Assembly: GCA_965644265.1 (NCBI GenBank)
Contig: OZ286463.1
Location: 19,096,001-19,160,000, forward strand
Length of the DNA stretch: 64,000 nt
Direction: 5' to 3'
DNA from: Glycera tridactyla
Taxonomy: Eukaryota
The position numbers and the translations under genes are program-made. Shown here in pieces: positions 2,713 through 62,506 of this stretch. The notes below the pieces were generated by a model, which made no database searches, was not told the origin of the DNA, and was given only the letters and a program-made list of their open reading frames with translations. How positions within the stretch are numbered: position 1 is the stretch's first letter; every line of letters begins with the position of its first letter.

Positions 2713-2830
2713 CTTCTTTACTCAACTTTGGATCAAGATCGTGCAGACGGGCAAGTATCAAGTAATAAGTGAAGCCAACTTCGTCCAGTTGTTCTTTCAT
2801 CTCAGCTGAGGGCTTGCCTGCCTCTCCGGT
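2713..2830 (-). CDS. ITPR: ITPR-like exon 32 in window
   Basis: ttccttgctag|...|gtaaga, 118 nt, phase 0-1, TGEAGKPSAEMKEQLDEVGFTYYLILARLHDLDPKLSKE. Corresponds to the VGHNIYILAHQL helix of canonical ITPRs. Confidence 0.9.
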
Positions 2831-8271: not shown

Positions 8272-8340
<69 letters not shown>

Positions 8341-11300
8341 ATATGTAAATCGGTACATCAATATCTCATCCACGTGAGAGNNNNNNNNNNNNNNNNNNNN
8401 NNNNNNNNNNNNNNNNNNNNNNNNNNNNNNNNNNNNNNNNNNNNNNNNNNNNNNNNNNNNNNNNNNNNNNNNNNNNNNNNNNNNNNNNNNNNNNNNNNNN
8501 NNNNNNNNNNNNNNNNNNNNTCAATATCTCATCCACGATTTTTATCATATGCATATATTGTATATATCATGCAATATATTTTCCAGCATATTCAATTGGT
8601 ATGTATGTGATATCTACACTGTTCCGGGAGCTGCTCTATGTATTTGAACAGAGATTTCAGTCATACTCTACTACTCGGCAACACAACCACACAACTCACA
8701 GGAAAAGGGCGGCTTGGCAGAGGTAGCTCAACATTCTATACAAATTATGGTGCATTGGAACGTAGCTATGTTGTCTGTTACTTAACAATATAATCCTCAA
8801 AATCACAATCAGTACACTGTGGGTGTGGCAAAGTGCGTAGGTATACGTAATTATACTACCAAACCACAACATTAACCGCTTTACTGCTGTACCAATATAT
8901 TACGGAATTGCATATGTCCCAACTGACAGGATCGAAACATGGAGAGGTACCTAACAGTTCTCCGAATCATCAGGGTGATTCTGCAGATATAGCAGTAAAG
9001 GGGCTAACCTGATAACTAATAAGCATTGTGTTGGAGTACCTGCCATACAATTGACTGATTGCAGGAAGACTGATATGCCACTGCATGTTCATAGAAGATA
9101 GAAGATTACCAAGATTACCAATCTGATCAGAATTGAAAACATTGCTCACAGACGCATGGACAGATTAAATTTCATAGCTGCTTTTGCATATATCCAAGGG
9201 AACTTGAAACATATATCCATTTTGAGAGAGATCATGCATGTACTTTCAGGCAATGACATTTCAGATGATCTATGCATCATTCCATGTATGACACTAACGA
9301 GTTATGCTTATCTATTATCTAACATCAAATAATGATAGTTCATACATTCTTCAAAGTAGACAGAACATACATATGAAAAAGTTTCTCTTTCAAATTTCAA
9401 ATTATTCAAGTTTGATCCAAGAATGCAAGCTTCTTGTATGAAGCGGAGACGTCATGCACTGATGGAAAGTGTCTGAAGTATGTATGAACGATTGTGGAAC
9501 GTCGAATTATTCAATACATGTCAATATATTCACATTTCGGGGTAGTCATACCATTATTAATGGATCAATCCAATTCAATTCGACTAATACAATATGGTCA
9601 CTGTAATAATTTCCAAGATATGAATGCAAACATTCAATACAATGACATGCAATGCTGAAAGGGGTATACAATTATGCCTCACGAAATCATTTCATCATCT
9701 TATCATTGTTCTATGTTATCAAGTGGTAATCTACAAAAAGAAGAATAACTCACCATGGATCCAGCAAGCATGTTTTTGCCCATTTTGGCAAGATTTTTGG
9801 CTGATTGTAAAGTCATTCCAATATTCAGATTAGTTCCTGACTTCCGCACAGGTATATCTATCTTTGGTCTGTCAGGCTGCAATTGACAAGAGCAAAGTAA
9901 AATTGTTATAAACATTTCGTCGTTGGAAAATATCCTGACTTCTCCAGCCTAACTGATACCAATCAAATCACAATCAAATCATTCTAATATTGATCAATTC
10001 TGTTATCTGTGACTACCGATATTTTTGTTGTTGTCAAATGTGGTCTTCACGGAATTCTCTTTTGTGTGAGATCTGATCTTGGTAGTGCACAGCCATTTTA
10101 CATGTGATTGAATTTTGAACTCTCCGCTTTTCTTGCCTTGGGCTCAACAGCGGTGGTTGTGACGTCAAATGCTCAGCACCACAGTTTAGCTGTATACATA
10201 CACACCTTTCTCATGGTCACCCATCAAGTCATCTGAGTGCATTATCATTTTGGATTTATTTCGCATCTTGCCTACCTCCATGACACTGTAGAAACATTTC
10301 GTAGATCACTTGGAGCCCAATTAATTTGATCTAGATGATTGATCAAGTAATGTATAGCATTCTAAACGTTGCATATATCTGTAGGAGGTACAACTCATAT
10401 ATCTAGGAATCCAAACTGTATTGGACAACGATGGTTTGCTGGTTCATCCAAAACATGAAACTGACATTCATGACCTACCTGTGTACTCTCGTAGCATCCA
10501 CACATGCATCTGTACAATGCTTCCTTATCCAACGTATCTTTGATCTCCTGAAATGGAGGTGAAGAAAAGGTTACGTTTGGTGCAGAGAGCAAAACAAAAT
10601 GAGCCATCTACATAATCGAAAGTCTGTGATTGAGGGGAAAGTCACAAATTACAGAATACAAATACAGCAGGTGCGCATGAGCAATATAAATATGTGAATT
10701 GAATTGAATCATATCATAGGGGTGACAATGTCACAGTGGTGCATGATACTAGTCGTAAATAGTCATAAGTTCGATTACAAATTCAAGAGACATCTATGAA
10801 TAATTGATCACAATCACCACTCAAAGTATCCTCTGAAGGCAATTCATCGGACATATGGTGAGTGATCACTGATTTCTTTAATGTATTTCAGTGAAACTCA
10901 TATCAACGAACGAACGTGGTTGAATCATACTCACTAATCGAGAAAAGACATGTGATTTCAAGGGACATGAGTGAGACCCAAGCACCAACTCAAATCAGTG
11001 AAAATCCTTGCTTGCTCAGATGGTCAAATATGTTAGCAGAAATGAGGTTGAAATGTTAAAGTCAGATAGCAATTATGAGATACGGATTCTGTCAATAGTG
11101 ATATGGGAAACATGACATGCAAAAGGAAATCATTCAATCAATACTGTATATTGAATATGCAGGAACCAAACAGCCAGCACAAATTTTATGACAGTCATGA
11201 AGAGGTGCCAATGATGGATATGAGAAAGACCATTGCAAATGTAGTGATGGAAATGGCACAATACATGGGTGAATCGTAGACGAATATTGGTGATCTCCAG

Positions 11301-22255: not shown

Positions 22256-22298
<43 letters not shown>

Positions 22299-52200: not shown

Positions 52201-55200
52201 GTGGAATATCTACTGAAATATGAGATACGAGACGACAGGAGAATAGAGAATATATATTCATTGAGTAACTGACATGATTTCTCATAAGCAGAGTTAATCG
52301 TGGAATATCTACCGAAATATGAGATACGAGACGACAGGAGAATAGAGAATATATATTCATTGAGTAACTGACATGATTTCTCATAAGCAGAGTTAATCGT
52401 GGAATATCTACTGAAATATGAGATACGAGACGACAGGAGAATAGAAAGTATATATTCATTGAGTAACTGACATGATTTCTCATAAGCAGAGTTAATCGTG
52501 GAATATCTACTGAAATATGAGATACGAGACGACAGGGAAATAGAAAGGATATATATTCATTGAGTGAGGCTCAGATGTTTGTTGGTTTGCTAGATAGGTG
52601 GTCTATTGGTTTGTGATTTGGACGTGTGTATAATGGCAGTGGGTGGTTTGATGTTTGTTGGTTTGCTAGATGGCTGGTCTGTTGGTTTGTGATATGGACG
52701 TGTGTATAATGGCAGTGGGTGGTTTGATGTTTGTTGGTTTGCTAGATGGGTATTATGTTGGTTCGTAATTTGGACGTGTGTATGATGGCAGTGGGTGGTT
52801 TGATGTTTGTTGGTTCGCTAGATAGGTGGTTCATTGGTTGTTAATTTGGACGTGTGTATAATGGCAGTGGTTGGTTTGATGTTTGTTGATTTGCTAGATG
52901 GGTGGTCTATTGGTTGTTAATTTGGACGTGTGTATAATGGCAGTGGTTGGTTTGATGTTTGTTGGTTTGCTAGATGGCTGGTCTGTTGGTTTATGATATG
53001 GACGTGTGTATAATGGCAGTGGGTGGTTCGATGTTTGTTGGTTCACTAGATGGGTGGTCTATCGGTTGGTAATTTGGACGTGTGTATGATGGCAGTGGGT
53101 GGTTCGATGTTTGTTGGTTTGCTAGATGGGTGGTATGTTGGTTGGTAATTTTGACGTGTGTATGATGGCAGTGGGTGGTTCGATGTTTGTTGGTTTGCTA
53201 GATGGGTGGTCTATTGGTTGGTAATTTGGACGTGTGTATAATGGCAGTGGGTGGTTTGGTGGGTTATTGAGTGTCTAATTCTTTGCCATATAATATATAG
53301 ACAATATATGAATTTCTATACAATATTGAGATTCACACGTCTTGCCCTGTGGTATATTCTTGCTACATACTCTGTGATACAGTATAACAACTGGATTAGA
53401 TAGATCTGAACTGGAAGGTCTATTCAGAAATTGTTTTGTTTGGTCACTCTGCAGGAGATGAAACATACCAATTGATCAGCTGAAAAAGGCTTACAAATGA
53501 TAGAGGTGATGTATCAAATATCCAGCCTCCAAGTAGGTCAATTGGTAATGAGATCAATAATGTAGTAATGAATGTAGTAACGAAGAGAACTCTAACTCAC
53601 CATGATTAATCAGGATGTTCTGATTCATTGGATGGCGTTCATGCTCTTCCTTCGGCAGGTGACAGAACCTAGGGAGAGAGTTGTGGTATGGAGTAATGTT
53701 TTGAATTGTTTGGTACGACTAGTGTTATTAGATATTTGTTGGAACTAGTACTTCATGATTCCCATAATTAATGATCTGTTTGTGAAAACTCTAAAATGAA
53801 TATCAGAAATTTTGCTCAGTGACTTGAATATTGGTTTGTATTGAAACTTATTCATAAATTCAAATCTTGCCAGCACCAAGGATGTTCCATATTGATAATG
53901 TGTTCAGAATCTATATATGATATTATTACTAAGATTTCCGATTCGAAGTTTCTGCACTATTATCCACATCAAGCATCACCTGGGAAATTCTATTCGGTAC
54001 TAATGTGTACTTAATGCCATATCACAGACAATCTCTCAAGTAGCATGATTGAGTTTATATATGTCAATCAGTCGACAATTCATATTCATCACTTCTGCAT
54101 CGACTCAACTATGGATATTCATGTCTGGAAGTTGAGGTACATCCTTGATTTGATTCTTATAATCTTCACCACTCACTGGCATTCAAGTTGACAACCACCT
54201 TTTGCATCCTGCACCAACTCAGACAAAGTGTCTCAACTGCTGATATTCATGTTTGGAAGTTGAGGCACATCCTTGATTTGATTCTTATAATCTTCAACAC
54301 TCAGTGGCAATCAAGTTGACAACCACCTTCTGCATCCTGCACCAACTCAGACAAAGTGTCTCAACAGCTGATATTCATGTCTGGAAGTTGAGGTACATCC
54401 TTGATTTGGATCTTATAATATTCGCTACTCAGAGATATCTGAATATCTATCATTTATATCATTATTCAAAAATGATCTTATATTCCCCGTGGGCTTCAAT
54501 ATAACAAGCTACATATTTGAATGGAGAACAAATATAGGAAACTAACTCAGTGTATCTGTCCAGAACGGACGACATTGTCTTGACTTGGTCATCGTTCAGC
54601 TTGGATTTTGCATGTCGGCGCAAGATGGGCATGGTTCTCGCTATTTCTCGATGTACGTGGCATGAATCTGTCGTTATCAGAACCTGAGACAAACATGAGC
54701 AACATTAACATATACAGATAGAGGATGTGAAAAGGAGTCAGACAGAGAAGCACATGATTTGAAAGAATCATATTTTATGACACAACCCATTGCCAGCCAG
54801 TGAATGAACAAAACATGGCTGATAACCTGAGCTCGGATCTCTTCATTCTATTGAATGCAAGTACCTCCCATGTTCGGCATTAGATCTTTTTGATGATAGT
54901 ATGCCATTTGTCTTCTATAACAAAATCAGTGAAAGTTGTGTGATATACATATATCATGAACAATTTGCAAGTGATATGGATTGTTTGTTTGTGTCACACT
55001 CCAAGATGACTGAGGTTATGTGTGAATGCCTTCTTTCCATCGTCATGAAATACCACGTGGGTTGATGTAATGCAGAACTTCACATCGGACTGTGTATGTC
55101 TGTGTGTCTGCATGACTGAAGGATTGTATGCGTCAATTGGTGGGTGGATTGAACTAGGGATTGGTTGATGGCAGGTTAATCGATTGACTAAAAATTTTAG

Positions 55201-58200
55201 AGGATGATCATTGGTGTATGTACCTCCAACATTGAATAAGCAGTATAGGATCAACGAGCTGAGGATTCGAGCATGCTTGTCAAACATATGTATTTTTAAG
55301 TGTCCACAACTAAAATGAAAAACCATAAGCTATGATTATGTTTTCTCCAACCTGCACTCGGGATCCACATGTATATATGTATGTATGTATGTATGTATGT
55401 GGAGGTCAACAGTTATTATGGTGTGAAGTATGGAGCATACACACTTACCATTGCCTGAACAGCCATTTTGAAGAGTTTGGTCTTGGATGAATAATACTTG
55501 TTGAGTAATGCTAAGGACTTGTTGATCATCTTGTCATACTTGTAGTTGGAAAGGTCCTGGAAATCAAAGTATTGATGAAATTATGATAGACCAATATTCT
55601 GCGAACATTCAGGCAGGATGACTCCTAGCAGATTCAATTGGACCTAGAAGCTGTGTATCCATGAGATAAGATGGTAGATTTTCCTTAGCGCCAACAGTTC
55701 CACTTCCAACTCGGCTAAATCTCCGGTACCACAGATGTGAATGATGATGATAATGATAGCAATTGTTGCTAAGAATGGCCAGCTCACCAATGTGCCATAT
55801 GGCCATCTCAAAGTAAGCCTAAATGCAGAGACATCCTATTTTCTCGTTTTCACTGTATTTGCTCAGTCAAACATGAGTACATGCACTGATTGCAGATACA
55901 AACTATTACAATATATGCGCCATCGTTTCTGACAATTGAGCCTCAAGTTATATATTGGAGATTTTGAGCAATCCGATGATAGTGACAGTGAGTATTAAGA
56001 ATTGAGTATCCAATATTTACCATGAGGATGGAAGTGATCTGTTCAGAATCAAAATAGGCCGTTGCATCAAACATTGCGCGCAAATCCTTCAGTGCTTTCT
56101 TCTGTAATTTCAGGCCTCTCCTGAAATGTATAACAAGATAATGATACAGAAAAATTCACATGATCAGTTGCAAGATAATGGTAAGACTTGGCCCATTCTC
56201 ATCAAATGGTTGTCATATAGATACCGTGATCTATGGTACTTGCGAAATATGAAGATATATTTGGATCATATGCATATCGAAATACATCAGGCTATTGATA
56301 CACTGCACTCCCAGAACTGGAGGAGAATGTGACCCTGTTACCTGTAGGCCCACTCTCATAGATGGCATAAATCCTCATACATCATCCAACTTGAAGTTGC
56401 TGCATATGCCAGTATATCACGAGGATGATTGTATTCGAGCTGTATCAATGTGAAAAGTGAGCTGATTCCCATGCCTGATTATAATGACTCATCCAAATAT
56501 CCAAAGACAATGCATCTGGTACTGGTGAACAGAGTGCATGCTAGGTAATCACAACCAAGTAGACACTTCGGAATCTAGGATCAAAACAAAGACCACTCTT
56601 GAAGGTGAACAGGGTACGTTTTTCTCTTTGTGAAAAAAATGTTTAGATTCTGCGCATCTAAACGCTGGAATACATTGGTTACAGGCCGGCCAGAAAGGGA
56701 AGTGATGAAAAGAGAACCATTCAAGGAATTTATGAAGGAGCTGCGTCATATAAGACTCTGACGATTATATATTATTATATACAAGACCTTTCATTCATTT
56801 CATCTATTCATTTTCATCTGATTCACCATCATTCAATCATCGCATTTGAATTTATGTAGCTTTTCATATCGTCTCCCTCGAAATGAACAATTTACCTTGC
56901 TGTATGATTGTTTAAATGCTTGTTGACGACGTTAGATAAAAGTTTTTCAATTTCAAATTCCAATGTGTTTTGACCAAGGATACCTCATGTTGCTTTCTTC
57001 ATTCTGAACCGATTACTCTTTACTGCTGTTCGATTCAAAGTTTTTTTCCGATGTTATGATGGAAATGAATTTTGATACAGATGATCAAATCACAAATTTA
57101 TCAAATTAGCTGTTAATTTATCTATTTAGTTATCAATCTAGTTACTATTGTCATTTCCATGATTGTGTATTTAGTGGTTGTCTTTATTGAGTTCTGAATC
57201 CCTGTAGTCATACCCTATAGAGAATGCTTAAATTATGTACTGGTTTCATTTATTGTCCAATGCTGTCATGTTTACTCTCAAAACAACTTGTTGATTTTTT
57301 TGTATGATCAAGTGGATTACTTAATTGATTATCTGCCAGCTAAAGTTCATGTATATCTTACGCTATGAATACCAAGGGTCGAATCCGGGTCATTCATTCA
57401 TTCATTCATCCTCATATCATCCATTATCATTCCATCCATTGTCATTTGTTGATACCATCCTCGCTCATACTATCGTAGTTGAGTATATGTTCATATCAAT
57501 TCGTCATCCTGAAGATGTATGCTCCTGTAGCAACCAAATGTCGAATAAAAATAATGTGTTAAAAATAAAAAAGCAAAACAGAATTCACAATTACATGCAT
57601 GATGGTATGATTACTTACTTGGACTGATCGAAGGGATCGAAGACCTCATACAGGAGCTCTGACAAGACACTCCGCTGTTTGGCCTTCTTGGCATTCGCTG
57701 TTGTCTCTGCTGTCTTGAATTTGGCAATAAAACTCTGAAATATTGCAAGTAGATTCTCTGATTGGTACATGCGACATCCATTATGGCGATTCCATTATGG
57801 TAGCGTAATTCTTACTGAAATGTTGGATATATGTTCAACATCATGTAGCATCTGATCCAAAGGTCATATTGCATGCATTCATAACGAATGGTCTTCATTC
57901 CAAATTTCAGTATTTGACGTTGGTTATTATCTCAGTGTTGCAGCTACTTCATCTATAGAAGATTGTGTGGATCCCCATTATTCAACCATGCCACTAAATA
58001 CTTGGAAAATAACATGATCAGGATCAGGTGCTGGCAAGGGACACACACATCCTTAATGCTACGGACCAATGACTATCACATTGGTATCGAAGGCTTAAGT
58101 TACGTGTGAGGGATTGCAAAGATTTCAAATATGTATTCTTTTTTTGAATATCATATATAGTGTATATCCACTTACCTCAAGGCGAGAATTGAATTGGAAC

Positions 58201-59123
58201 GTGAGAAGTAAATCAAGCACCTCCATAGCTCTGGAAGTCAAGGTCAAAGCTTAAATGAGCTATTATTTTTTTTACAATGAATGGAAACCTTCAACTTCAC
58301 CAGCACACTCATCGGCTATTCCCCACATTCCATGAACACTGCGAGTTATTCACTCTGACATGTAACTCCTTATTCGATCAGAATTGCCACAATAACGGAC
58401 AGTGAGATGAGATATGCCCAAACAAGCACTAGTTTCAGATTCCAGAATCATCGTGCCAAATACAGTGGACATTGGTTACTGGCGAGGGCATATTTTCGAT
58501 AACCATGCACTGAGAACATTGGTGTCAGATGCTCCTTGCATCCGCAGTACATGCGGTGAATATTCATTATAATATCCCCTTGGCTAGTGACATCCATGTT
58601 CTCAAAGAGGGATTTTGTATATCCAACATAGTTCTGAGTTGAGGATCGAATTACAAACCCTTGTATCATTCCTGTTCAATTTGTCACCTGCAGAGGATAG
58701 TAGTTACGCGGACAGCCTGGGAATTGGTATGCCTTTGTATGCTTTTGTAAGTCATTGAATAAATTCTATCATTTCCCAACTGGCAAGGATGATGAGCGAG
58801 CTCTACCGACATCTAAGGTAGCAAGTCAAACTCAGAATATATATCTTCAAAAAGTATTGACTCTTCAATTATAATCGCAAAGCCACGCCACTAGTGGGAC
58901 ACCCATGCCACAAATATAAGTATACTCTTAAAAAAGTATTGACTCTTCAATTATAATCGCAAAGCCACGCCACTAGTGGGAAGCCAATGCCCCGAATATA
59001 AGTATACTCTTAAAAAGTATTGACTCTTCAATTATAATCGCAAAGCCACGCCCATGCCCCGAATACAAGTATACTATACTTGTTCTTCTCACCTCCTGAA
59101 AGCAAATGAACTGATGCGAAAAT

Positions 59124-59159
<36 letters not shown>

Positions 59160-62100
59160 CCGTCATAAATGGAAATTTCACAACATACATGGCCACATAG
59201 AAGTGTGATACTTACTGGAATTTAGCATTGCAAATAGCCTTTATTTCTGGTTTCGTCTCATATCGATCCTTCAATCGGTATGCATTCACCACCTTCTGAG
59301 AATCTTTGGTGAATCCTAGAATAAGACATAAGACAATAATGATTGGTGGCTGGATAAGATAGCTCTTGTGGATGGGTGACTACTTCTTCATAAATGATGA
59401 GCGATGTTTGGTGAATCCTAGAATAAGACATAAGGCAATATTGATTGGTGGCTGGATAAGATAGTTTGTGTGAATGTGGGACTACTTCTTCATGAATGAT
59501 GAGCGATCTTTGGTGAATCCTAGAATAAGACATAAAGCAATATTGATGGGTGGCTGGATAAGATAGTTCTTGTGGATGGGGGACTACTCCTTCATAAATG
59601 ATGAGCGATCTTTGGTGAATCCTAGAATAAGACATAAAGCAATATTGATGGGTGGCTGGATAAGATAGTTCTTGTAGATGGGGGACTACTCCTTCATAAA
59701 TGATGAGCGATCTTTGGTGAATCCTAGAATAAGACATAAGGCAATATTGATTGGTGGCTGGATAAGATAGCTCTTGTGGATGGGTGACTACTTCTTCATA
59801 AATGATGAGCGATCTTTGGCGAATCCTAGAATAAGACATAAGGCAATATTGATTGGTGGCTGGATAGGATAGTTCTTGTGGATGGGGGACTACTCCTTCA
59901 TAAATGATGAGCGATCTTTGGTGAATCCTAGAATAAGACATAAAGCAATATTGATGGGTGGCTGGATAAGATAGTTTGTGTGAATGTGGGACTACTTCTT
60001 CATAAATGATGAGCGATCTTTGGTGAATCCTAGAATAAGACATAAAGCAATATTGATGGGTGGCTGGATAAGATAGTTCTTGTGGATGGGGGACTACTCC
60101 TTCATAAATGATGAGCGATCTTTGGTGAATCCTAGAATAAGACATAAAGCAATATTGATGGGTGGCTGGATAAGATAGTTCTTGTAGATGGGGGCCTACT
60201 CCTTCATAAATGATGAGCGATCTTTGGTGAATCCTAGAATAAGACATAAGGCAATATTGATTGGTGGCTGGATAAGATAGCTCTTGTGGATGGGTGACTA
60301 CTTCTTCATAAATGATGAGCGATCTTTGGCGAATCCTAGAATAAGACATAAGGCAATATTGATTGGTGGCTGGATAAGATAGTTCTTGTGGATGGGGGAC
60401 TACTCCTTCATAAATGATGAGCGATCTTTGGTGAATCCTAGAATAAGACATAAAGCAATATTGATGGGTGGCTGGATAAGATAGTTCTTGTAGATGGGGG
60501 CCTACTCCTTCATAAATGATGAGCGATCTTTGGTGAATCCTAGAATAAGACATAAAGCAATATTGATGGGTGGCTAGATAAGATAGTTTGTGTGAAAGGG
60601 GGACTACTTCTTCATAAATGATGAGCGATCTTTGTTGAATCCTAGAATAAGACATAAGGCAATATTGATTGTTGGGTGGATAAGATAGTTCTTGTGGATG
60701 GGTGACTACCTCTCCATAAATGATGAGCGAAACACAAATTCTGGGTCAAGTGAATAGCAAACAATCATCTGAATTGCAAATGCTTGCACTATTACCAGCA
60801 ATCATTTTTCATCTGTCACTTAAAACAATAAAGCAGACCAAGAACCATGTAATTGATGCTAATGAATGCTCACCTCCTTTCTCGTTGTCTGGAGGGAATG
60901 GTTTGTCATTCTTGCCATTCAAGAGATTCAGCAAGGGCTTCAGTAGAGACTTTATATCATCGCTGCCATAGTATCCGAATTTCACCAAAAAATGGAATAA
61001 TCGTAGAACCTGTCAAATGGAAAAAGTAATGATATGCATGATGAGCCATATATTGTGAAACAGTCGGTATACCAACTGATCCATGACATAGTAAACATCT
61101 TATCTTTCTTTCTTTGTTTGAGGTTCAACGGCATGTATCAACCCGTGGGTTATGTATGCCGTGTGTTCCTGGTTAATGGAAGCTAGGTGTTCTCTCCCCT
61201 GCAGAAATCACTCTCACAAACCCTGAACACAAGTTGATGGGGAACCTGAAAGGTTATCAAGAGGAAGTAGCTGACAGTTCAGACACACCTCTACCTAATC
61301 TGAACACACATAATAAACCTTTGATGGCATATCTGACTATGTAGCTGGCTGGAAGCTAACACTCAAGCCTGATAGCAATGCTTTTTTTTCGTAAACATCT
61401 TACATTTAAGCGATATCATCTGCAGATGGATTTATATCACACAGGATTATGTATGTCGAGTGTTCCTACAAGGTAGCTGGCTGTTCTGTCTCCATCAGCA
61501 TCCCTCTATCGTCCTCTGAACGCAAAGCGATAGAGGGGTGCTCAACAGGGAGCAGCTGACTGATGCATCTGGATTGAGGACATTGCCAGAAATGTGATAA
61601 TGCTTTATGTTTGGGTAATTAATCAAATGCTCACTTTGAGCTTTTGAATTCAAACGGGCATTACAATAATTTGTTCAATGATCAGTGCAATGCCATTGCA
61701 AAACCTAGCACACCAAGGTCCCGATCACAGTTCACGAGAACTGTTGTTCATGATACCTGTTTTGTGCATAGTAATAATATTGATGCGGACAAAACATGAG
61801 ACCATTTCATAGCACAGTTAGGGCGGTCCGAATAAATAGAGGAGATATGAAGGAAAAAGTATATTTTGATAATGTAGACATAAGTAGAGAATTTCTCAAG
61901 CTATAATCTCTCAAGACAGACGCCAAAGAATTCAGATCCTATTTGACACCCAAGAACGTTTTCTGAGAAAATGAGGAAAGGTCAGATGTAGGCCACCTGG
62001 CCCATACCCATATGTGGTTGCCATCTGAACGGACCCTACACTCAAACTATACACATCCCACGTATCTGAGCTAGGGGAGAGATGAAGTTCTACTAGCATC

Positions 62101-62506
62101 ACCCATTGCTAACAAGAACACGCTAGGCTCATGTTTCCCAAGAAGCTTGTTCGAGAGATAAGAGTTTGTTTGTTTGAGGGTCAACGGCATGTATCAACCC
62201 ATGGGTTATGTATGCCATGTGTTCCTGGTTGATGAAAGCTAGATGTTCTCTTCCCTGCAGACATCACTCTCACAAACCCTGAAACACAAGTTGATGGGGA
62301 ACCTGAAAGGCTGTCAAGTGGAAGTAGCTGACAGTTCAGACACACCTCTACCTAATCTGAACATACATAATAGAGACAAGAGTAATTACCTGTTCTATGA
62401 GCATGTTGCGACCGATCATCGTCCCTGTCATATCACGATTCTCTTCGAGGAATTCAGCTATCCAGTCACGTATCACGGGAAATAATGTCACAAGATCCTT
62501 GATGAT
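2713..62506 (-). CDS. ITPR: Multi-exon inositol 1,4,5-trisphosphate receptor family (ITPR-like) Ca2+ release channel gene, internal part, 32 exons
   Basis: 32 AG/GT-bounded exons join in one frame (3925 nt, every phase compatible). Peptides such as VLRLFHFLVKFGYY, LVLRVLARMCDGQHEGLQDYLREQ, SFNIVAETAQF, QLFETLNEF and EVGFTYYLILARL align by eye to ITPR central and RIH-associated regions. The gene continues beyond both window ends. Confidence 0.92.
4310..5077 (+). mobile_element. pearl/HINE-like non-autonomous element (Helitron/Helentron-associated type)
   Basis: Starts aactagagctttgtcacagaggtgac...tataccc. Ends with an (ACCG/ACCA)n microsatellite, gtgactccagtataccccc and a terminal hairpin. 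This architecture is known from DINE-1/pearl-like repeats. Family assignment is from recall. Confidence 0.6.
8260..8338. repeat. (TA)n microsatellite
   Basis: Near-perfect TA run. Confidence 0.97.
8381..8520. other. Assembly gap (140 N)
   Basis: Run of n. Confidence 1.
9754..9876 (-). CDS. ITPR: ITPR-like exon 31 (poorly conserved, possibly cassette)
   Basis: aattgcag|...|gtgagt, 123 nt, phase 0-0, PDRPKIDIPVRKSGTNLNIGMTLQSAKNLAKMGKNMLAGSM. Supported by splice sites and frame only. Confidence 0.68.
10479..10547 (-). CDS. ITPR: ITPR-like exon 30
   Basis: atttcag|...|gtaggt, 69 nt, phase 0-0, EIKDTLDKEALYRCMCGCYESTQ. Confidence 0.87.
12320..12570. repeat. 84-bp tandem repeat x3
   Basis: tgtgttctacacaggtacagg at 12344, 12428 and 12512. 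Confidence 0.92.
13912..14098 (-). mobile_element. tRNA-derived SINE, family A copy 1
   Basis: Minus strand has a tRNA-like head with A box tggctcagtggtag and B box-like ggcttcatccc, and a (CATTT)n tail. 12-bp TSD with 1 mismatch: tcaaaatggaga 13900-13911 and tcaagatggaga 14099-14110. Confidence 0.85.
14488..14611 (-). mobile_element. SINE family A copy 2, 5'-truncated
   Basis: Lacks most of the tRNA head. Perfect 13-bp TSD ctacccatatatg at 14475-14487 and 14612-14624. Confidence 0.88.
15019..15206 (-). mobile_element. SINE family A copy 3
   Basis: Full length with A and B boxes and a (CATTT)4 tail. No clear TSD. Confidence 0.85.
16200..16283 (-). CDS. ITPR: ITPR-like exon 29
   Basis: cgttgcag|...|gtaggt, 84 nt, phase 0-0, VLTLKQSIGNLLITLIEENSPESLQVAR. 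Confidence 0.9.
16719..16820 (-). CDS. ITPR: ITPR-like exon 28
   Basis: tcttacag|...|gtatgt, 102 nt, phase 0-0, GNQANRYVLLNSKIVDYINFILRAGEFKKCPSEK. Confidence 0.92.
17057..19144. repeat. 140-bp tandem array, about 15 copies
   Basis: atgttcgagtatcattcaatt recurs at about 140-bp spacing (17096, 17236, 17379, 17519 ... 18913). The array ends 28 nt from the exon 27 donor. Confidence 0.97.
19173..19322 (-). CDS. ITPR: ITPR-like exon 27 (RIH-associated domain)
   Basis: gtttgcag|...|gtctgt (weak donor), 150 nt, phase 0-0, DYLREQPDNMKSFNIVAETAQFVNLVYSNINPQTIDLIIQLFETLNEFTV. Confidence 0.92.
19869..20042 (-). CDS. ITPR: ITPR-like exon 26 (start of RIH-associated domain)
   Basis: ttttctag|...|gtaagc, 174 nt, phase 0-0, VAKLATKSKEAKENK...DDGYIELVLRVLARMCDGQHEGLQ. 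Confidence 0.93.
20796..21290. repeat. 101-bp tandem array x5
   Basis: catgatgggtggtacg at 20839, 20940, 21041, 21142 and 21243. Confidence 0.95.
21349..21545 (-). mobile_element. SINE family A copy 4
   Basis: A and B boxes with a locally duplicated head. Perfect 12-bp TSD agttgggtgaga at 21337-21348 and 21546-21557. Confidence 0.87.
21569..21760 (-). CDS. ITPR: ITPR-like exon 25 (Lys-rich linker)
   Basis: actacag|...|gtacgt, 192 nt, phase 0-0, SKAAKRREEKSKQHKAPKKKKPKEAKVNGFANDKMKDSQTLINSEHIELDTLDMTVDTIDPNTQ. Low complexity, so support is splice sites and frame rather than homology. Confidence 0.78.
22232..22301. repeat. (TG)n microsatellite
   Basis: TG run with a few TA interruptions. Confidence 0.95.
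22886..23928 (+). mobile_element. pearl/HINE-like element with internal core repeats
   Basis: Starts aactagg. Internal diverged subrepeats (cca-gtacaaattggccactg). Ends with (GACAGACG)n and the hairpin tagggc...gcccta. Confidence 0.55.
24691..25035. repeat. 43-bp tandem array x8
   Basis: catgaacttaagcacaacactgcatgtgtgcacagaaaatggt repeated. Confidence 0.95.
26571..26811 (-). mobile_element. Fold-back non-autonomous element, family D copy 1
   Basis: Reverse-complement homolog of 40369-40643, with an internal inverted repeat. Confidence 0.7.
28551..28650 (-). CDS. ITPR: ITPR-like exon 24
   Basis: atttgcag|...|gtaatg, 100 nt, phase 2-0, RSLAAQQRARQKEALAQTKSMQNSISIGKKAIQ. Confidence 0.87.
29155..29252 (-). 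CDS. ITPR: ITPR-like exon 23
   Basis: tttttcag|...|gtaagc, 98 nt, phase 0-2, SSLLYYFLHTREESFFAAIRARMHLSALAIKE(R). Confidence 0.92.
29452..29932. repeat. 53-bp tandem array x9, nearly invariant
   Basis: aatgtgtgttatcgtgactcatgggatgaaacctttaccaagaaccatatata repeated. I saw only one variant base. Confidence 0.97.
30311..30467 (-). CDS. ITPR: ITPR-like exon 22
   Basis: tctttcag|...|gtaagt, 157 nt, phase 2-0, QVQLVRDLQIELNDMGAVIMVLPHLARPSDRIAKEVLAFVCIMLFNANAKVQ. Confidence 0.92.
30615..32346. mobile_element. GC-rich TIR element (MITE-like) flanked by TTAA, containing a nested LINE fragment
   Basis: Left end ttaa|gccacccttacataggcacggcacctgct. Right end read as reverse complement is ttaa|gcagcccttacataggcccggcacctgct. 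TTAA at 30611-30614 and 32347-32350. Confidence 0.82.
30905..31985 (+). mobile_element. 5'-truncated non-LTR retrotransposon (CR1/L2-like) 3' fragment with reverse transcriptase ORF remnant (about 30904-31661)
   Basis: Open frame with GVPQGSILGPLLFVIFINDL, MYADDT, NKLTVNTKKTKWM and FKYSGVWLD, then an AT-rich 3' UTR, aataaa and a (tttgaa)-like tail. No endonuclease or RT N-terminal part. Confidence 0.9.
32514..32672 (-). CDS. ITPR: ITPR-like exon 21
   Basis: atttcag|...|gtaagt, 159 nt, phase 2-2, ISSNMQRFLTSENARLEQEELDIRCLQLLRAVIHNEERKLPEDWEENPQDHK. Confidence 0.92.
32729..33046. repeat. About 106-bp tandem array x3
   Basis: acaagg(c/t)ctc at 32731, 32837 and 32944. Fills most of the intron between exons 20 and 21. 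Confidence 0.92.
33170..33308 (-). CDS. ITPR: ITPR-like exon 20
   Basis: gtttgcag|...|gtgagt, 139 nt, phase 1-2, (E)YTTIGGDDELPLGEEFQEHLKRFVRPSEKKVIKKIELVKKIVEQL(R). Confidence 0.9.
33446..33634 (-). mobile_element. Retroposed repeat family B copy 1
   Basis: Minus-strand 3' end is the hairpin ggcat...aacccacgggtt...atgcc, then gttaaacct and a (CAAA)n tail. Homologous to five other copies. Confidence 0.85.
34378..34702 (-). mobile_element. SINE family C copy 1 with Deu/Nin-domain-like core
   Basis: Minus strand gcacgtaaaagatcc...aaagagtagggg...ccccgg resembles the Deu/Nin SINE core as I recall it. (CAAT)n tail. 12-bp TSD with 1 mismatch at 34366-34377 and 34703-34714. Confidence 0.7.
38261..38390 (-). 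CDS. ITPR: ITPR-like exon 19
   Basis: gtcaacag|...|gtaggt, 130 nt, phase 0-1, GHKEYYQGELELNAKLRTFAVNCSLLYGGHNNVQAQLKFKSKR. Confidence 0.9.
40111..40320 (-). mobile_element. SINE family C copy 2 with Deu/Nin-domain-like core
   Basis: gcacgttaaagatcc...aaagagtaggg core and (CAAA)n tail. Perfect 12-bp TSD tctcttatcggg at 40099-40110 and 40321-40332. Confidence 0.75.
40369..40643 (+). mobile_element. Fold-back non-autonomous element, family D copy 2
   Basis: 40-bp inverted arms at 40377-40416 and 40484-40523 (35/40 complementary). Homologous to 26571-26811. Confidence 0.72.
41937..42114 (-). mobile_element. Retroposed repeat family B copy 2
   Basis: A-rich tail. 10-bp TSD actgatgact at 41927-41936 and 42115-42124. 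Confidence 0.85.
42115..42300. repeat. About 103-bp tandem duplication
   Basis: actgatgactggactgtgtcaaatcatc...cacaggtcacaac occurs twice. Confidence 0.88.
42945..43016 (-). CDS. ITPR: ITPR-like exon 18
   Basis: tctctttcag|...|gtaaga, 72 nt, phase 0-0, VMEGLIEQLRNTNRLRESRHHTSK. Confidence 0.82.
42981..43425. repeat. 73-bp tandem array x6 overlapping the exon 18 acceptor
   Basis: catgac at 43011, 43084, 43157, 43230, 43303 and 43376. Unit is 37 nt of intron plus 36 nt of exon. Confidence 0.95.
43825..43929 (-). CDS. ITPR: ITPR-like exon 17
   Basis: ttattcag|...|gtgagt, 105 nt, phase 0-0, GFCEAVIPLVSNPSHLKGIISCITAIIPSSTVPNS. Confidence 0.85.
44449..44535 (-). CDS. ITPR: ITPR-like exon 16
   Basis: ttttgcag|...|gtatgt, 87 nt, phase 0-0, AFFNQFYIPEKDMYPAEVENTDKLARALV. 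Confidence 0.88.
44881..45060 (-). mobile_element. SINE family A copy 5
   Basis: A and B boxes. 12-bp TSD with 1 mismatch: gaacgatgggaa 44869-44880 and gaaccatgggaa 45061-45072. Confidence 0.87.
45370..45454 (-). CDS. ITPR: ITPR-like exon 15
   Basis: tttttcag|...|gtaaga, 85 nt, phase 2-0, DVSDPQDVESVAHVTLHYFFDTVMPILQ. Confidence 0.87.
45851..45964 (-). CDS. ITPR: ITPR-like exon 14
   Basis: ttttgcag|...|gtaaat, 114 nt, phase 2-2, SLWKFLQSVARDACDLTEYISKNQETTTHLLKKPPDK. Confidence 0.88.
46235..46439 (-). mobile_element. Retroposed repeat family B copy 3
   Basis: Flanked by a 115-bp direct duplication at 46120-46234 and 46440-46554. Confidence 0.85.
46742..46860 (-). mobile_element. Retroposed repeat family B copy 4 (lacks the 3' hairpin)
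   Basis: Perfect 16-bp TSD tgccaataatagatgt at 46726-46741 and 46861-46876. Confidence 0.85.
46884..47071 (-). CDS. ITPR: ITPR-like exon 13
   Basis: gctacag|...|gtaatt, 188 nt, phase 0-2, GENRFIESMCQTIMGVEELMWVMNHDDIDCNLKRPFLRYFLWVYMKTAGSAVESGAGDLPHD. Confidence 0.93.
47153..47334 (-). mobile_element. SINE family A copy 6
   Basis: A and B boxes. Perfect 12-bp TSD tgtagcagatgg at 47141-47152 and 47335-47346. Confidence 0.87.
47803..48126 (-). CDS. ITPR: ITPR-like exon 12
   Basis: ttttgcag|...|gtacag, 324 nt, phase 0-0, AFIGNQSTCLKV...PEFLDLLNVIVKVEG...YLISLIDLLATCAE. Confidence 0.94.
49053..49214 (-). CDS. ITPR: ITPR-like exon 11
   Basis: tttatcag|...|gtaagt, 162 nt, phase 0-0, EQYRGMEEVLKKSLKLLKALARGNDVVQVRMFERLDTLLKIKVVESDLAIALKE. 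Confidence 0.93.
49518..49630 (+). mobile_element. 3' end fragment of a pearl/HINE-like element
   Basis: (GACC/GACT)n microsatellite then gtgactccactata...aaacttcatttg...ggggggta, like 4970-5077. Confidence 0.5.
51777..51832 (-). CDS. ITPR: ITPR-like exon 10
   Basis: atttcag|...|gtaagc, 56 nt, phase 1-0, (E)LLTLVFDILSQEIDAKLM. Confidence 0.87.
51869..52563. repeat. 99-bp tandem array x7
   Basis: gtaactgacatgatttctcataagc at 51869, 51968, 52067 and onward. Produces the spurious 33-aa-periodic ORF 51818-52483. Confidence 0.96.
52574..53258. repeat. 76-bp GT-rich tandem array x9
   Basis: ggacgtgtgta at 52620, 52696, 52772 and onward. Abuts the 99-bp array. Confidence 0.95.
53601..53668 (-). 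CDS. ITPR: ITPR-like exon 9
   Basis: ctccctag|...|gtgagt, 68 nt, phase 2-1, FCHLPKEEHERHPMNQNILINH. Confidence 0.88.
54112..54422. repeat. 128-bp tandem repeat x2.4
   Basis: gatattcatg at 54114, 54242 and 54370. Confidence 0.9.
54547..54683 (-). CDS. ITPR: ITPR-like exon 8
   Basis: gtctcag|...|gttagt, 137 nt, phase 0-2, VLITTDSCHVHREIARTMPILRRHAKSKLNDDQVKTMSSVLDRYT(E). Confidence 0.88.
55449..55556 (-). CDS. ITPR: ITPR-like exon 7
   Basis: tttccag|...|gtaagt, 108 nt, phase 0-0, DLSNYKYDKMINKSLALLNKYYSSKTKLFKMAVQAM. Confidence 0.92.
56021..56120 (-). CDS. ITPR: ITPR-like exon 6
   Basis: atttcag|...|gtaaat, 100 nt, phase 2-0, RGLKLQKKALKDLRAMFDATAYFDSEQITSILM. Confidence 0.88.
57619..57734 (-). 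CDS. ITPR: ITPR-like exon 5
   Basis: atttcag|...|gtaagt, 116 nt, phase 0-2, SFIAKFKTAETTANAKKAKQRSVLSELLYEVFDPFDQS(K). Confidence 0.88.
58176..58230 (-). CDS. ITPR: ITPR-like exon 4
   Basis: cttccag|...|gtaagt, 55 nt, phase 2-0, AMEVLDLLLTFQFNSRLE. Confidence 0.9.
58848..59073. repeat. About 82-bp tandem repeat x2.8
   Basis: aagtattgactcttcaattataatcgc at 58852, 58934 and 59015. Confidence 0.9.
59126..59156. repeat. (CA)n microsatellite
   Basis: Perfect CA run. Confidence 0.95.
59216..59315 (-). CDS. ITPR: ITPR-like exon 3
   Basis: ttattctag|...|gtaagt, 100 nt, phase 1-2, (G)FTKDSQKVVNAYRLKDRYETKPEIKAICNAKF(Q). Confidence 0.88.
59301..60730. repeat. 102-bp tandem array x14 overlapping the exon 3 acceptor
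   Basis: gaatcctagaataagacata at 59311, 59413 ... 60637. Produces the spurious 465-aa periodic ORF. Confidence 0.97.
60874..61009 (-). CDS. ITPR: ITPR-like exon 2
   Basis: tttgacag|...|gtgagc, 136 nt, phase 0-1, VLRLFHFLVKFGYYGSDDIKSLLKPLLNLLNGKNDKPFPPDNEKG. Confidence 0.92.
61103..61390 (-). mobile_element. Retroposed repeat family B copy 5 (longest)
   Basis: Perfect 12-bp TSD gtaaacatctta at 61091-61102 and 61391-61402. Confidence 0.87.
62166..62371 (-). mobile_element. Retroposed repeat family B copy 6
   Basis: 12-bp TSD with 1 mismatch: agagataagagt 62154-62165 and agagacaagagt 62372-62383. Confidence 0.85.
62390..62506 (-). CDS. ITPR: ITPR-like exon 1 in window
   Basis: ttacctag|...|gtaatt, 117 nt, phase 0-0, IIKDLVTLFPVIRDWIAEFLEENRDMTGTMIGRNMLIEQ. 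Confidence 0.88.

What the first reader, a model, noticed from the sequence alone, without database searches (positions are those of the whole stretch)
2713..62506. Divergent, non-canonical IP3 receptor paralog
Seen: the spliced RIH-associated region reads IELVLRVLARMCDGQHEGLQDYLREQPDNMKSFNIVAETAQFVNLVYSNINPQTIDLIIQLFETLNEFTVGNQANR. Established: canonical animal ITPRs carry [14 protein letters not shown]...[26 protein letters not shown]...SLTEYCQGPC and VGHNIYILAHQL. This protein lacks the [13 protein letters not shown] segment and the CQGPC motif, and has VGFTYYLILARL instead. Inference: it belongs to a separate, little-studied IP3R/RyR-superfamily Ca2+ channel lineage rather than being the standard ITPR ortholog. 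Its ligand and regulation cannot be assumed.
Basis: partly seen in the sequence, partly recalled or inferred. Interest (0 to 1): 0.7.

Follow-up and report, generated by a model that had tools for sequence, protein, structure and literature searches.

The report
Annelid IP3RB-type calcium channel gene

Summary
On the minus strand, 32 homology-supported exons (62506 down to 2713) give 3,952 nt of open frame with AG/GT at every junction. The quoted peptide is the exact join of exons 20042-19869, 19322-19173 and 16820-16719. Transcript-like contigs from four public runs show these very joints.

The N gap (8381-8520) lies inside the intron 9753-2831. Donor and acceptor are both phase 0, and the alignment to the Capitella orthologue is collinear there.

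The whole gene spans more than 175 kb, with at least 65 exons and a 2,928-codon model without internal stops.

Trees place it with Capitella CAPTEDRAFT_201920 (100/99). That pair sits inside a 100/100 clade with other invertebrate "ITPR-like" proteins, choanoflagellate proteins and Capsaspora CAOG_04510. Canonical ITPRs and RyRs fall outside.

The same genome has a textbook ITPR on C17, one RyR on C4 and five further loci of the divergent type. This is the IP3RB family (Alzayady 2015; described in annelids in PMC7992859), so it is a new member of a known kind.

The missing GSTTGG insert and CQGPC, and a selectivity filter two residues shorter (YGLIGD), are shared by all animal members of the clade examined. 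The ligand remains unknown.

The scan's notes hold no earlier IP3RB finding.

The parts
62390..62506 (-). exon w1 (IIKDLVTLFPVIRDW...)
   Evidence: 12/12 reference proteins vote junctions 70817|62506 and 62390|61009; AG/GT
60874..61009 (-). exon w2
59216..59315 (-). exon w3
58176..58230 (-). exon w4 (small; AMEVLDLLLTFQFNSRLE)
   Evidence: sensitive tblastn with Capitella P0251, 84% identity; junctions; AG/GT
57619..57734 (-). exon w5
56021..56120 (-). exon w6
55449..55556 (-). exon w7
   Evidence: 11 references
54547..54683 (-). exon w8
53601..53668 (-). exon w9
51777..51832 (-). exon w10 (small; LLTLVFDILSQEIDAKLM)
49053..49214 (-). exon w11 (start of second RIH region)
47803..48126 (-). exon w12, the longest (108 aa)
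   Evidence: aligns to human IP3R3 1268-1377 only at E=1e-5. 185 relatives in 1.84 billion representatives; the full-length ones are invertebrate and Capsaspora proteins. Junctions:
46884..47071 (-). exon w13
45851..45964 (-). exon w14
   Evidence: Capitella HSP; donor ATG|GTAAAT read by eye
45370..45454 (-). exon w15. The acceptor could be 45445 instead of 45454
   Evidence: required by phase between w14 and w16; resembles the Capitella segment
44449..44535 (-). exon w16
43825..43929 (-). exon w17
42945..43016 (-). exon w18 (the 'exon 18' of the neighbouring note s1-312450)
38261..38390 (-). exon w19
33170..33308 (-). exon w20
   Evidence: 12/12 votes
32514..32672 (-). exon w21
30311..30467 (-). 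exon w22
   Evidence: 12/12 votes
29155..29252 (-). exon w23
28551..28650 (-). exon w24
21569..21787 (-). exon w25 (basic linker, KKKKPKEAK...)
   Evidence: Capitella HSP; donor read by eye; RNA-type contigs end and join exactly here
19869..20042 (-). exon w26. Ends ...YIELVLRVLARMCDGQHEGLQ and holds the Asp that replaces Ca2+-sensor Glu (rat IP3R1 E1978)
19173..19322 (-). exon w27, core of RIH_assoc (DYLREQPDN...LNEFTV). Lacks the 11-residue [11 protein letters not shown] insert; keeps the Glu equivalent to E2042
   Evidence: Pfam RIH_assoc 44.4 bits, cut-off 28.5. No IP3R in the PDB at E<=10. Joints in contigs. Alignment
16719..16820 (-). exon w28 (GNQANRYVLL...; takes the place of QGPCHENQ)
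16200..16283 (-). exon w29
12791..12925 (-). extra exon seen only in transcripts. The start at 12925 is certain; the end at 12791 is my in-frame guess (45 aa, NPYSDSRSQNQ...RRPR). It is absent from all homologues, so probably a cassette
   Evidence: a contig leaves exon w29 at 16200 and continues with the letters of 12925-12896; acceptor ttgttctag|AAT; candidate donor AGG|GTGGGT
10479..10547 (-). exon w30
9754..9876 (-). exon w31 (PDRPKIDIPVRK...MGKNMLAGSM)
   Evidence: 50% identical to the Capitella segment; splice sites
8381..8520 (.). assembly gap, inside the intron between w31 and w32
2713..2830 (-). exon w32 (TGEAGKPSAEMKEQLDEVGFTYYLILARLHDLDPKLSKE)

Best explanation
The window holds 32-33 exons, about residues 766-2082 of a model of at least 2,928 residues. 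They belong to an intact, spliced and transcribed gene for a subunit of an IP3RB-type intracellular Ca2+-release channel in an annelid-like genome. It is the 1:1 orthologue of Capitella teleta CAPTEDRAFT_201920.

Shown here:
- Membership of the IP3RB clade.
- A canonical ITPR, one RyR and five further IP3RB-type loci in the same genome.
- An open frame through 65 exons, with spliced transcripts over five of them.
- Conserved S6 gate (NIIFGIIVDTF) and C-terminal Cys/His zinc-finger motif.
- Both acidic Ca2+-sensor positions kept (Asp in MCDGQH, Glu in LNEFT).
- A pore loop two residues shorter than canonical (YGLIGD in place of GLRNGGGIGD).
- R265, K508, R511, R568 and K569 of the ligand pocket unchanged and R504 changed to Lys. 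The beta-loop T266-T267-G268-R269 reads E-V-D-(+3 residues)-P, and Y567 is Ser.

Inferred: the protein forms tetrameric ER channels that are co-activated by cytosolic Ca2+. Its basic N-terminal pocket, conserved from Capsaspora to annelids, binds an anionic ligand. I put IP3 itself, probably with altered affinity, at about 40%. Another phosphorylated ligand and no small-molecule ligand at all get about 30% each.
For: Gene model.

RNA joints.

Trees:
- 89 rows, B clade SH-aLRT 100.
- careful tree, 38 rows x 699 columns. B clade 100/100, canonical clade with the own C17 fragment 100/100, RyR with the own C4 fragment 100/100, this gene plus Capitella 100/99.

Identities: 71% Capitella, 60% Owenia, 45.5% hemichordate B, 31.8% Capsaspora CAOG_04510, 21-23% canonical ITPRs, 27% RyR over 848 aa.

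PDB comparison of the RIH_assoc core exon: the C17 exon hits ITPR1-3 at E=2e-36. The window's equivalent exon hits no IP3R at E<=10.

Family census.

Motifs. Numbering is anchored on rat IP3R1 and on PMC9522344 and PMC13319452.

Literature: PMC7992859 states that the bilaterian ancestor had IP3RA, IP3RB and RyR. It says IP3RB is lost in vertebrates and absent from Drosophila and C. elegans. Its tree includes Capitella.
Against: - The family name rests on the grouping with Capsaspora CAOG_04510. I infer that protein to be the published CO.IP3R-B only because PMC9522344 gives a different accession for CO.IP3R-A. The defining paper (Alzayady 2015) is not held.
- The first ~60 residues were not found.
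- Only five exon junctions are confirmed by transcripts. Those transcripts contain an exon (12925-) that homology did not predict, so the isoform structure is incomplete.
- The runs are labelled RNA only by guess.
- The joined model was never scanned against Pfam. Exon by exon, only RIH_assoc and MIR pass their cut-offs.
- Every statement about gating, ligand and localisation is inference.
- The reported failure of CO.IP3R-B to bind IP3 is from my memory of the 2015 abstract. If correct, it argues against IP3 gating.
Confidence: 0.85

Rival explanations
1. It is the genome's ordinary ITPR orthologue that has merely evolved fast.
For: NCBI names its relatives 'inositol 1,4,5-trisphosphate receptor type 1/2/3-like'. 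The overall architecture is that of an IP3R.
Against: A canonical ITPR sits on C17. It carries [16 protein letters not shown]...[18 protein letters not shown]...SLTEYCQGPCHENQ and is about 90% identical to solved ITPR1-3 in that exon. The B and A clades are each 100/100. Hemichordates, molluscs and other annelids also carry both types.
Confidence: 0.01
2. It is a decaying or non-functional duplicate (pseudogene) of an IP3R-like gene.
For: Six paralogous loci exist. The introns are full of tandem arrays, some of which copy exon or acceptor sequence.
Against: There is no stop in 2,928 codons across 65 exons, and every in-window junction is AG/GT. Spliced contigs occur in four runs. It is 71% identical to the Capitella orthologue, with the gate, the zinc finger and the basic pocket residues conserved.
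Confidence: 0.03
3. It is a ryanodine-receptor-lineage channel rather than an IP3R-type one.
For: By my memory of Alzayady 2015, IP3R-B and RyR share an ancestor. The local identity to RyR1 (27% over 848 aa) is slightly higher than to canonical ITPRs.
Against: RyR-repeat hits in the genome lie only at C4. The protein has about 2,900 residues, not about 5,000. RyRs form their own 100/100 clade, and my trees do not join them to the B clade. RyR keeps GGGIGD and QGPC; this protein keeps neither.
Confidence: 0.03
4. It works just like a canonical IP3 receptor: high-affinity IP3 binding plus biphasic Ca2+ control.
For: R265, K508 and R511 are all kept; K508Q alone abolishes IP3 binding (PMC13319452). 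R568 and K569 are kept too, and R504 is Lys. The two Ca2+-sensor acidic positions are kept.
Against: The beta-loop that holds a phosphate (T266-T267-G268-R269) is replaced by E-V-D, three extra residues and P. Y567 is Ser. By my memory of RyR structures, the second-shell residues of the Ca2+ site would be the His of CENHN/CEGHN and the Gln of QGPC; both differ here. The filter is two residues shorter. By my memory of the 2015 abstract, the Capsaspora B-type protein bound no IP3.
Confidence: 0.2

Closest known systems
IP3RB / IP3R-B family (Alzayady et al. 2015; leech ip3rb1 and ip3rb2 in Heath-Heckman et al. 2021, PMC7992859); nearest member Capitella teleta CAPTEDRAFT_201920
   Same: Same clade (100/100) and 71% identity to the Capitella protein. 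It coexists with a canonical IP3RA and a RyR in one genome, as reported for leech. Every animal member examined shares the missing [12 protein letters not shown] insert, xGN in place of QGPC and the shortened filter without GGG. It is absent from vertebrates, arthropods and nematodes among about 150 relatives retrieved.
   Different: This genome has six IP3RB-type loci, four of them on one chromosome-scale contig; Helobdella is reported to have two. Transcripts carry a 45-aa-type extra exon (12925-) that no homologue has.
Canonical IP3 receptor (ITPR1-3; Drosophila Itp-r83A; this genome's C17 gene)
   Same: Same superfamily and order of parts: N-terminal ligand region with MIR, two RIH regions, RIH_assoc, a C-terminal channel domain, and a Cys/His zinc finger after S6. 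The S6 gate motif, K508, R511, R265 and both Ca2+-sensor acidic positions are conserved.
   Different: Only 21-23% identity. No [11 protein letters not shown] insert, no CQGPC, and VGFTYYLILARL for VGHNIYILAHQL. YGLIGD for GLRNGGGIGD. Altered beta-loop of the IP3 pocket. Long Gly-rich disordered C-terminal tail.
Ryanodine receptor (this genome's C4 gene; vertebrate RyR1 and RyR2)
   Same: RIH_assoc, a channel domain with a similar S6, and the zinc finger.
   Different: No RyR repeats or SPRY at this locus and about half the size. RyR keeps GGGIGD and QGPC. Separate 100/100 clade.

Membership tests
IP3RB (IP3R-B) family | Groups with the non-A IP3R of Capsaspora and with invertebrate IP3RB proteins, to the exclusion of canonical ITPRs and RyRs | tested here: met
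   Clade support is 100/100 in the careful tree and SH-aLRT 100 in the 89-row tree. Caveat: that CAOG_04510 is the published CO.IP3R-B is inferred, not read from the defining paper.
IP3RB (IP3R-B) family | Exists beside a canonical IP3RA and a RyR in the same genome | tested here: met
   C17 is canonical. C4 is the RyR.
IP3RB (IP3R-B) family | IP3R-type architecture (Ins145_P3_rec, MIR, RYDR_ITPR, RIH_assoc, Ion_trans; about 2,500-3,000 aa; no RyR or SPRY repeats) | tested here: inconclusive
   Exon by exon: RIH_assoc 44.4 bits and MIR 26.1 bits pass their cut-offs. Ion_trans (21.9) and RYDR_ITPR (13 and 16.5, collinear) fall below theirs. Ins145_P3_rec is not seen. The joined model was not scanned. 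Orthologues that are 60% identical carry all five families. The model has 2,928 aa.
IP3RB (IP3R-B) family | Clade signature seen here (my own, not a published definition): MCDGQ for LCENH, no [11 protein letters not shown] insert, xGN for QGPC, and a filter without GGG that is two residues shorter | tested here: met
   None of about 100 animal clade members has GGG[VI]GD or CQGPC.
IP3RB (IP3R-B) family | No IP3 binding, as reported for the Capsaspora member (from my memory of the 2015 abstract) | not testable with these tools
   Needs a binding assay. The sequence gives a mixed picture.
Canonical ITPR (IP3RA) | Motifs LCENHN...[17 protein letters not shown]...TEYCQGPC and VGHNIYIL | tested here: not met
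   The C17 locus has them.
Canonical ITPR (IP3RA) | Selectivity filter GGG[VI]GD | tested here: not met
   The model reads YGLIGD. The motif is absent from the model.
Canonical ITPR (IP3RA) | All eleven IP3-contact residues (R265, T266, T267, G268, R269, R504, K508, R511, Y567, R568, K569) | tested here: not met
   Five are identical, R504 is Lys and five are changed, with a 3-residue insert. Numbering.
Canonical ITPR (IP3RA) | Falls in the canonical clade | tested here: not met
Ryanodine receptor | RyR repeats and SPRY domains, about 5,000 aa, GGGIGD filter, RyR clade | tested here: not met
   SPRY itself was not searched for.

The most novel reading that the evidence does not exclude
IP3RB channels may not be IP3-gated. 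The pocket keeps its basic residues under long purifying selection. The phosphate-holding beta-loop, however, is replaced by a longer, partly acidic loop, and the pore filter is two residues shorter without the GGG. The family would then respond to a different anionic ligand, or to Ca2+ alone, with different ion selection. Its six-fold expansion in this annelid would reflect cell-type-specialised ER channels, as hinted by leech ip3rb2 in touch neurons.
Probability: 0.25. Interest if true: 0.6.

Novelty: new member of a known kind. Interest (0 to 1): 0.3.

Why it matters
IP3RB is an old third branch of the IP3R/RyR superfamily. Most invertebrate phyla kept it, but no standard model organism has it, so almost nothing is known about how it is gated. 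In the library I could search, only one paper treats it at all.

This locus adds three things: a fully modelled and transcribed annelid member, a census of six paralogues beside one canonical ITPR and one RyR, and a clear list of what the animal members examined kept and changed.
- Kept: the gate, the zinc finger, the Ca2+-sensor acids and the basic pocket residues.
- Changed: the filter length, the beta-loop of the pocket and the residues around the Ca2+ site.

That list gives concrete targets for mutagenesis and for choosing a member for expression and cryo-EM. It also matters for annotation: automatic names such as 'ITPR1-like' or 'ITPR3-like' hide the distinction. As a discovery it is modest, because the family is already published.

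Tried and rejected
- Single-exon searches against solved structures found no IP3R for the RIH_assoc exons or the ligand-pocket exons. Only the 107-aa part of exon w12 that I searched matched, at E=1e-5. So I anchored residue numbering through a canonical hemichordate protein instead.
- I mixed canonical C17 exons into an alignment headed by a full-length IP3RB protein, hoping the word search would pull in canonical ITPRs. It returned only more IP3RB proteins. Canonical proteins came from a mite-like canonical hit used as query. No vertebrate ITPR sequence was available for the trees; hemichordate and arthropod ones, plus the own-genome C17 fragment, stand in.
- A whole-protein search of the own genome failed three times: once on the length limit and twice on the machine. 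A single-exon query worked.
- The defining paper (Alzayady 2015, PMC4540961) is not held. What I say of its content beyond PMC7992859 is from memory.
- I did not run an AU test.
- The N-terminal ~60 residues and the start codon were not found. A weakly conserved ORF at window coordinate ~117,300 (outside the window), present in the Capitella model, was left out of the model because 12/12 references support the direct junction 121102|113899.
- The joined (spliced) protein was built only inside scripts, by coordinates from the held files, for the alignments and trees. It was not sent to any search, family-scan or folding tool, so there is no whole-protein Pfam scan and no structure prediction.
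The N gap was not filled.
Full report
**What is in the sequence**

The window is G000:C11:19096001-19160000 of a 2.04-Gb genome in 207 contigs.

I ran tblastn with full-length relatives against the window plus 150 kb of fetched flanks. One collinear gene runs from about window coordinate 139,180 down to -37,620. That is more than 175 kb.

I chained the matches of twelve reference proteins. For each junction I chose the GT/AG pair that keeps the frame and best fits the reference. I added four small exons found with a sensitive search against the Capitella protein.

The result is 32 exons inside the window. They total 3,952 nt, have no stop in frame, and every junction is AG/GT behind a pyrimidine tract. 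The other two frames carry 81 and 82 stops.

With the flanks, the model has 65 exons and 2,928 codons. It ends at a stop codon and has no internal stop. About 60 N-terminal residues were not found.

Two neighbouring first-stage notes speak of 'exon 3' near 59.3 kb and 'exon 18' near 43.0 kb. Both match my count.

**The quoted peptide and RNA**

The peptide IELVLRVLARMCDGQHEGLQ|DYLREQ...NEFTV|GNQANR is the join of exons 20042-19869, 19322-19173 and 16820-16719.

Four public runs of one study hold 9-13% of the sampled words of window:16150-21850. The exonic share of that stretch is 12.8%.

Laid on the stretch, their contigs carry four joints:
- 21569|20042
- 19869|19322
- 19173|16820
- 16719|16283

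All four have CT..AC ends on the plus strand, which is GT..AG on the gene's strand. One 2,852-nt contig spans all five exons.

The runs are labelled RNA only by guess. Intron-less contigs with exact canonical boundaries are nevertheless what spliced transcripts give.

At 16200 a contig does not continue into my next exon (10547). It continues with the letters of 12925-12896, behind a good acceptor. So transcripts contain an extra exon that no homologue has. Its end could not be checked. The best in-frame donor is at 12791, which would make it 45 aa.

**The gap**

The only N run is 8381-8520. It lies in the intron between exon 9876-9754 and exon 2830-2713.
- The donor is ATG|GTGAGT, phase 0.
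- The acceptor is TCTTTTCTTTCCTTGCTAG|ACC, phase 0.

The Capitella protein aligns collinearly across the junction, with 19 residues here against 17 there. No exon is missing, and the frame does not depend on the gap's length.

A (TA)n microsatellite abuts the gap, and the same 17-mer stands on both sides. This is a break in repeat DNA, or possibly overlapping contig ends. I did not fill it.

**What it is related to**

Exon w12, searched as 107 of its 108 residues, matches human IP3R3 residues 1268-1377 at only E=1e-5.

A search of 1.84 billion cluster representatives gave 185 relatives. The full-length ones come from molluscs, a nemertean, a hemichordate, amphioxus, Capsaspora (CAOG_04510) and a choanoflagellate. 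No canonical ITPR was in the top 150.

Word searches added about 150 more: molluscs, annelids, nemerteans, brachiopods, a flatworm, an acoel, hemichordates, amphioxus, Trichoplax and sponges. Many species have two to four copies. No vertebrate, arthropod or nematode appeared.

The best relative is Capitella teleta CAPTEDRAFT_201920, then Owenia. The genome is therefore annelid-like.

Identities of the model:

| Compared with | Identity |
|---|---|
| Capitella | 71% |
| Owenia | 60% |
| hemichordate IP3RB-type | 45.5% |
| Capsaspora CAOG_04510 | 31.8% |
| canonical ITPRs | 21-23% |
| RyR1 (848 aa aligned) | 27% |

**Is there a canonical ITPR in this genome?**

Yes. Pfam scans of the whole genome show RIH_assoc at eight loci.
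- C17:72.8-73.25 Mb has the strongest Ins145_P3_rec and RYDR_ITPR hits.
- C4:98.97-99.16 Mb is the only locus with RyR repeats.

The C17 exons read [20 protein letters not shown] | [42 protein letters not shown]...SLTEYCQGPCHENQ. They match solved ITPR1-3 at E=2e-36 and about 90% identity.

The window's homologous exon finds no IP3R among solved structures even at E<=10.

The window's RIH_assoc exon matches exactly six places in the genome: itself plus five others at 69, 65, 52, 49 and 44% identity. Four are on C11 and two on C34. All five others show the DYLREQPDN-type motif, or a diverged form of it (C34:46.98 Mb reads EYLRHQQDN), and none has the GSTTGG insert.

I inspected only the few exons near RIH_assoc at those five loci. 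Whether they are all intact genes is not tested.

**Trees**

I used the region from RIH_assoc to the end of the C-terminal domain.

The first tree had 89 rows and 686 columns, with the LG+C20+F+G4 PMSF model and a quick search. The second was a careful search with 38 rows and 699 columns, giving ultrafast bootstrap and SH-aLRT supports. Both give the same picture:

| Clade | Support |
|---|---|
| All the invertebrate relatives, two choanoflagellate proteins, Capsaspora CAOG_04510 and this gene (stem ~1.4 changes per site) | 100/100 |
| Canonical ITPRs of arthropods and hemichordates plus the own C17 fragment | 100/100 |
| RyRs plus the own C4 fragment | 100/100 |
| This gene plus Capitella | 100/99 |
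| The above plus Owenia-1 | 94/86 |

Hemichordates (Ptychodera, Glandiceps) contribute sequences to both the canonical and the divergent clade.

The order of the three big clades is not resolved and the tree is unrooted. I therefore make no claim about which is sister to which.

Rows left out:
- From the 89-row tree, two of the sequences prepared for it: the 48-aa C34:46.98M fragment and the partial P0143.
- From the careful tree, the long-branched protist and unnamed rows.
- From both trees, most of the other relatives retrieved.

**The name of the clade**

PMC7992859 cites Alzayady et al. 2015. It states that the bilaterian ancestor had IP3RA, IP3RB and RyR, and that IP3RB was lost in vertebrates and is absent from Drosophila and C. 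elegans. It reports that Helobdella has two IP3RA, two IP3RB and one RyR, and that leech ip3rb2 is enriched in touch neurons. Its tree includes Capitella, Lottia and Saccoglossus.

PMC9522344 gives XP_004347577.1 as Capsaspora IP3R-A. CAOG_04510 (XP_004347257.1) is therefore a different, non-A paralogue.

On this basis I file the gene under IP3RB. The 2015 paper itself is not held. From memory, its abstract says that the Capsaspora B-type protein reached the ER but bound no IP3.

**What is kept and what is changed**

Numbering is for rat IP3R1 and is anchored.

Ca2+ sensor. E1978 is the Glu of LCENHN and E2042 is the Glu of TEYCQGPC.
- Here they read MCDGQH (Asp) and LNEFT-VGN (Glu). The negative charges are kept.
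- Two neighbours differ: the His of CENHN and the Gln of QGPC. By my memory of RyR structures these would be second-shell residues.
- The 11-residue [11 protein letters not shown] insert is specific to the canonical clade. It is absent from IP3RB, Capsaspora, the choanoflagellate and a diplonemid, and RyRs have a different insert there.
- VGHNIYILAHQL corresponds to VGFTYYLILARL.

Pore.
- Canonical C-x-(S/T)-L-x-M-C-I-V-T-x-x-N-x-GLRNGGGIGD is here C-STLWQCTITVIRYGLIGD. It is two residues shorter, has no GGG, and keeps the final Asp.
- Other IP3RB subgroups have lost even that Asp.
- The S6 gate (NIIFGIIVDTF) and the CFICS...HH...H..EHH zinc-finger motif are kept.
- None of about 100 animal clade members has GGG[VI]GD or CQGPC.

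Ligand pocket.
- R265, K508, R511, R568 and K569 are identical, and R504 is Lys.
- T266, T267 and G268 are E, V and D, followed by three extra residues.
- R269 aligns with Pro, which has a Lys next to it. Y567 is Ser.
- The same basic residues are kept in all members aligned, from Capsaspora to annelids.
- PMC13319452 lists these residues as the pocket and says that K508Q abolishes IP3 binding.

**How it most likely works**

Shown: the gene is intact and spliced. It encodes an IP3R-type protein whose channel gate, zinc finger, Ca2+-sensor acids and basic pocket are under conservation.

Inferred: a tetrameric ER cation channel, co-activated by Ca2+, with an anionic ligand in the N-terminal pocket. 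Whether that ligand is IP3 cannot be read from sequence.
- The conserved Arg and Lys residues argue for a phosphorylated ligand.
- The rebuilt, partly acidic beta-loop and the reported negative result for the Capsaspora protein argue against canonical IP3 binding.

The shorter filter predicts a different pore geometry. I do not predict its selectivity.

**Family scans**

Exon by exon, two Pfam families pass their cut-offs: RIH_assoc (44.4 bits against 28.5) and MIR (26.1 against 25.6). Ion_trans on the S6 exon scores 21.9, below its cut-off. RYDR_ITPR scores 13 and 16.5 on two consecutive exons at collinear profile positions, also below its cut-off. Ins145_P3_rec is not seen.

Orthologues at 60% identity carry all five families.

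The joined model was built only in scripts, by coordinates.

**Verdict**

The lineage is the published IP3RB family, which is already known in annelids. This is a new member of a known kind, of modest interest.

The useful extras are:
- the six-locus census beside one canonical ITPR and one RyR;
- the signature shared by the animal members examined (filter two residues shorter, sensor and pocket changes);
- the transcript-only exon at 12925.

The scan's notes contain no earlier IP3RB finding.

Noticed in passing
window 12791-12925 (minus strand): Transcript contigs splice exon 16283-16200 to an exon that starts at 12925. No homologue has this exon, which encodes a hydrophilic segment (NPYSDSRSQNQ...). 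Its 3' end is not determined.
   Followed up: partly
window 21307-21497: This intronic bin has a summed word depth of about 2,900-4,600 in all four runs, against 3-15 on the exons. It lies in a SINE-like repeat. Its translation (…LSGSMLG..AMGLGFNP.SYHAGMF…SSLLLGRWSDLAYSSAE.GPKT) recurs in both orientations, for example at 47216-47398, 44867-45085, 14906-15388 and 13969-14181.
   Followed up: no
window 17110-18927; 20812-21264; 51744-52570; 52593-53274; 59261-60745; 42777-43365: The introns of this gene are unusually rich in tandem arrays, with periods of about 140, 101, 100-ish, 102 and 73 bp. Two of them are the subject of other first-stage notes, which read them as copies of splice acceptors.
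   Followed up: no
L017:6487-8572 (G000:C11:116232487-116234572, minus strand): In the paralogue at C11:116.23 Mb, the exon encoding YKDEGYIELVLQVLSRMCDGQFAGLQ stands in about 18 tandem copies with a 116-bp period. This is the counterpart of the end of window exon 20042-19869. The copies have near-identical coding sequence.
   Followed up: no
L004, about 5536-6486 (window coordinates 99536-100486, outside the window): In the same gene, part of the exon at 100483-100405 (TRIEHVITGFWLHAMRGESNY) is repeated about 14 times downstream with a 63-bp period.
   Followed up: no
L001:5547-5591 and L001:3179-3226 (window coordinates 69591-69547 and 67226-67179): Two tiny exons of 15 and 16 codons, both whole multiples of three, share a ...(D/E)NW(I/L)xxxG motif. 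They lie just upstream of the window's first exon and could be skipped without breaking the frame. Capitella has both; eleven other references align without them.
   Followed up: partly
window 8355-8371 and 8521-8537: The same 17-mer (CGTGGATGAGATATTGA on the minus strand) stands directly on one side of the N gap and nine bases from it on the other. The two contig ends may overlap, or the gap may sit in a short repeat.
   Followed up: no
G000:C11 at 19.1, 67.4, 81.5 and 116.2 Mb; G000:C34 at 47.0 and 71.7 Mb: The six IP3RB-type loci sit on only two chromosome-scale contigs, four of them on C11. In the 89-row tree they fall into at least two old lophotrochozoan subgroups.
   Followed up: partly
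G000:C17:73007563-73008024: In the canonical ITPR gene, two nearby stretches both match the same part of the Ins145_P3_rec profile (positions 105-162 and 129-161). They may be duplicated or alternative exons.
   Followed up: no
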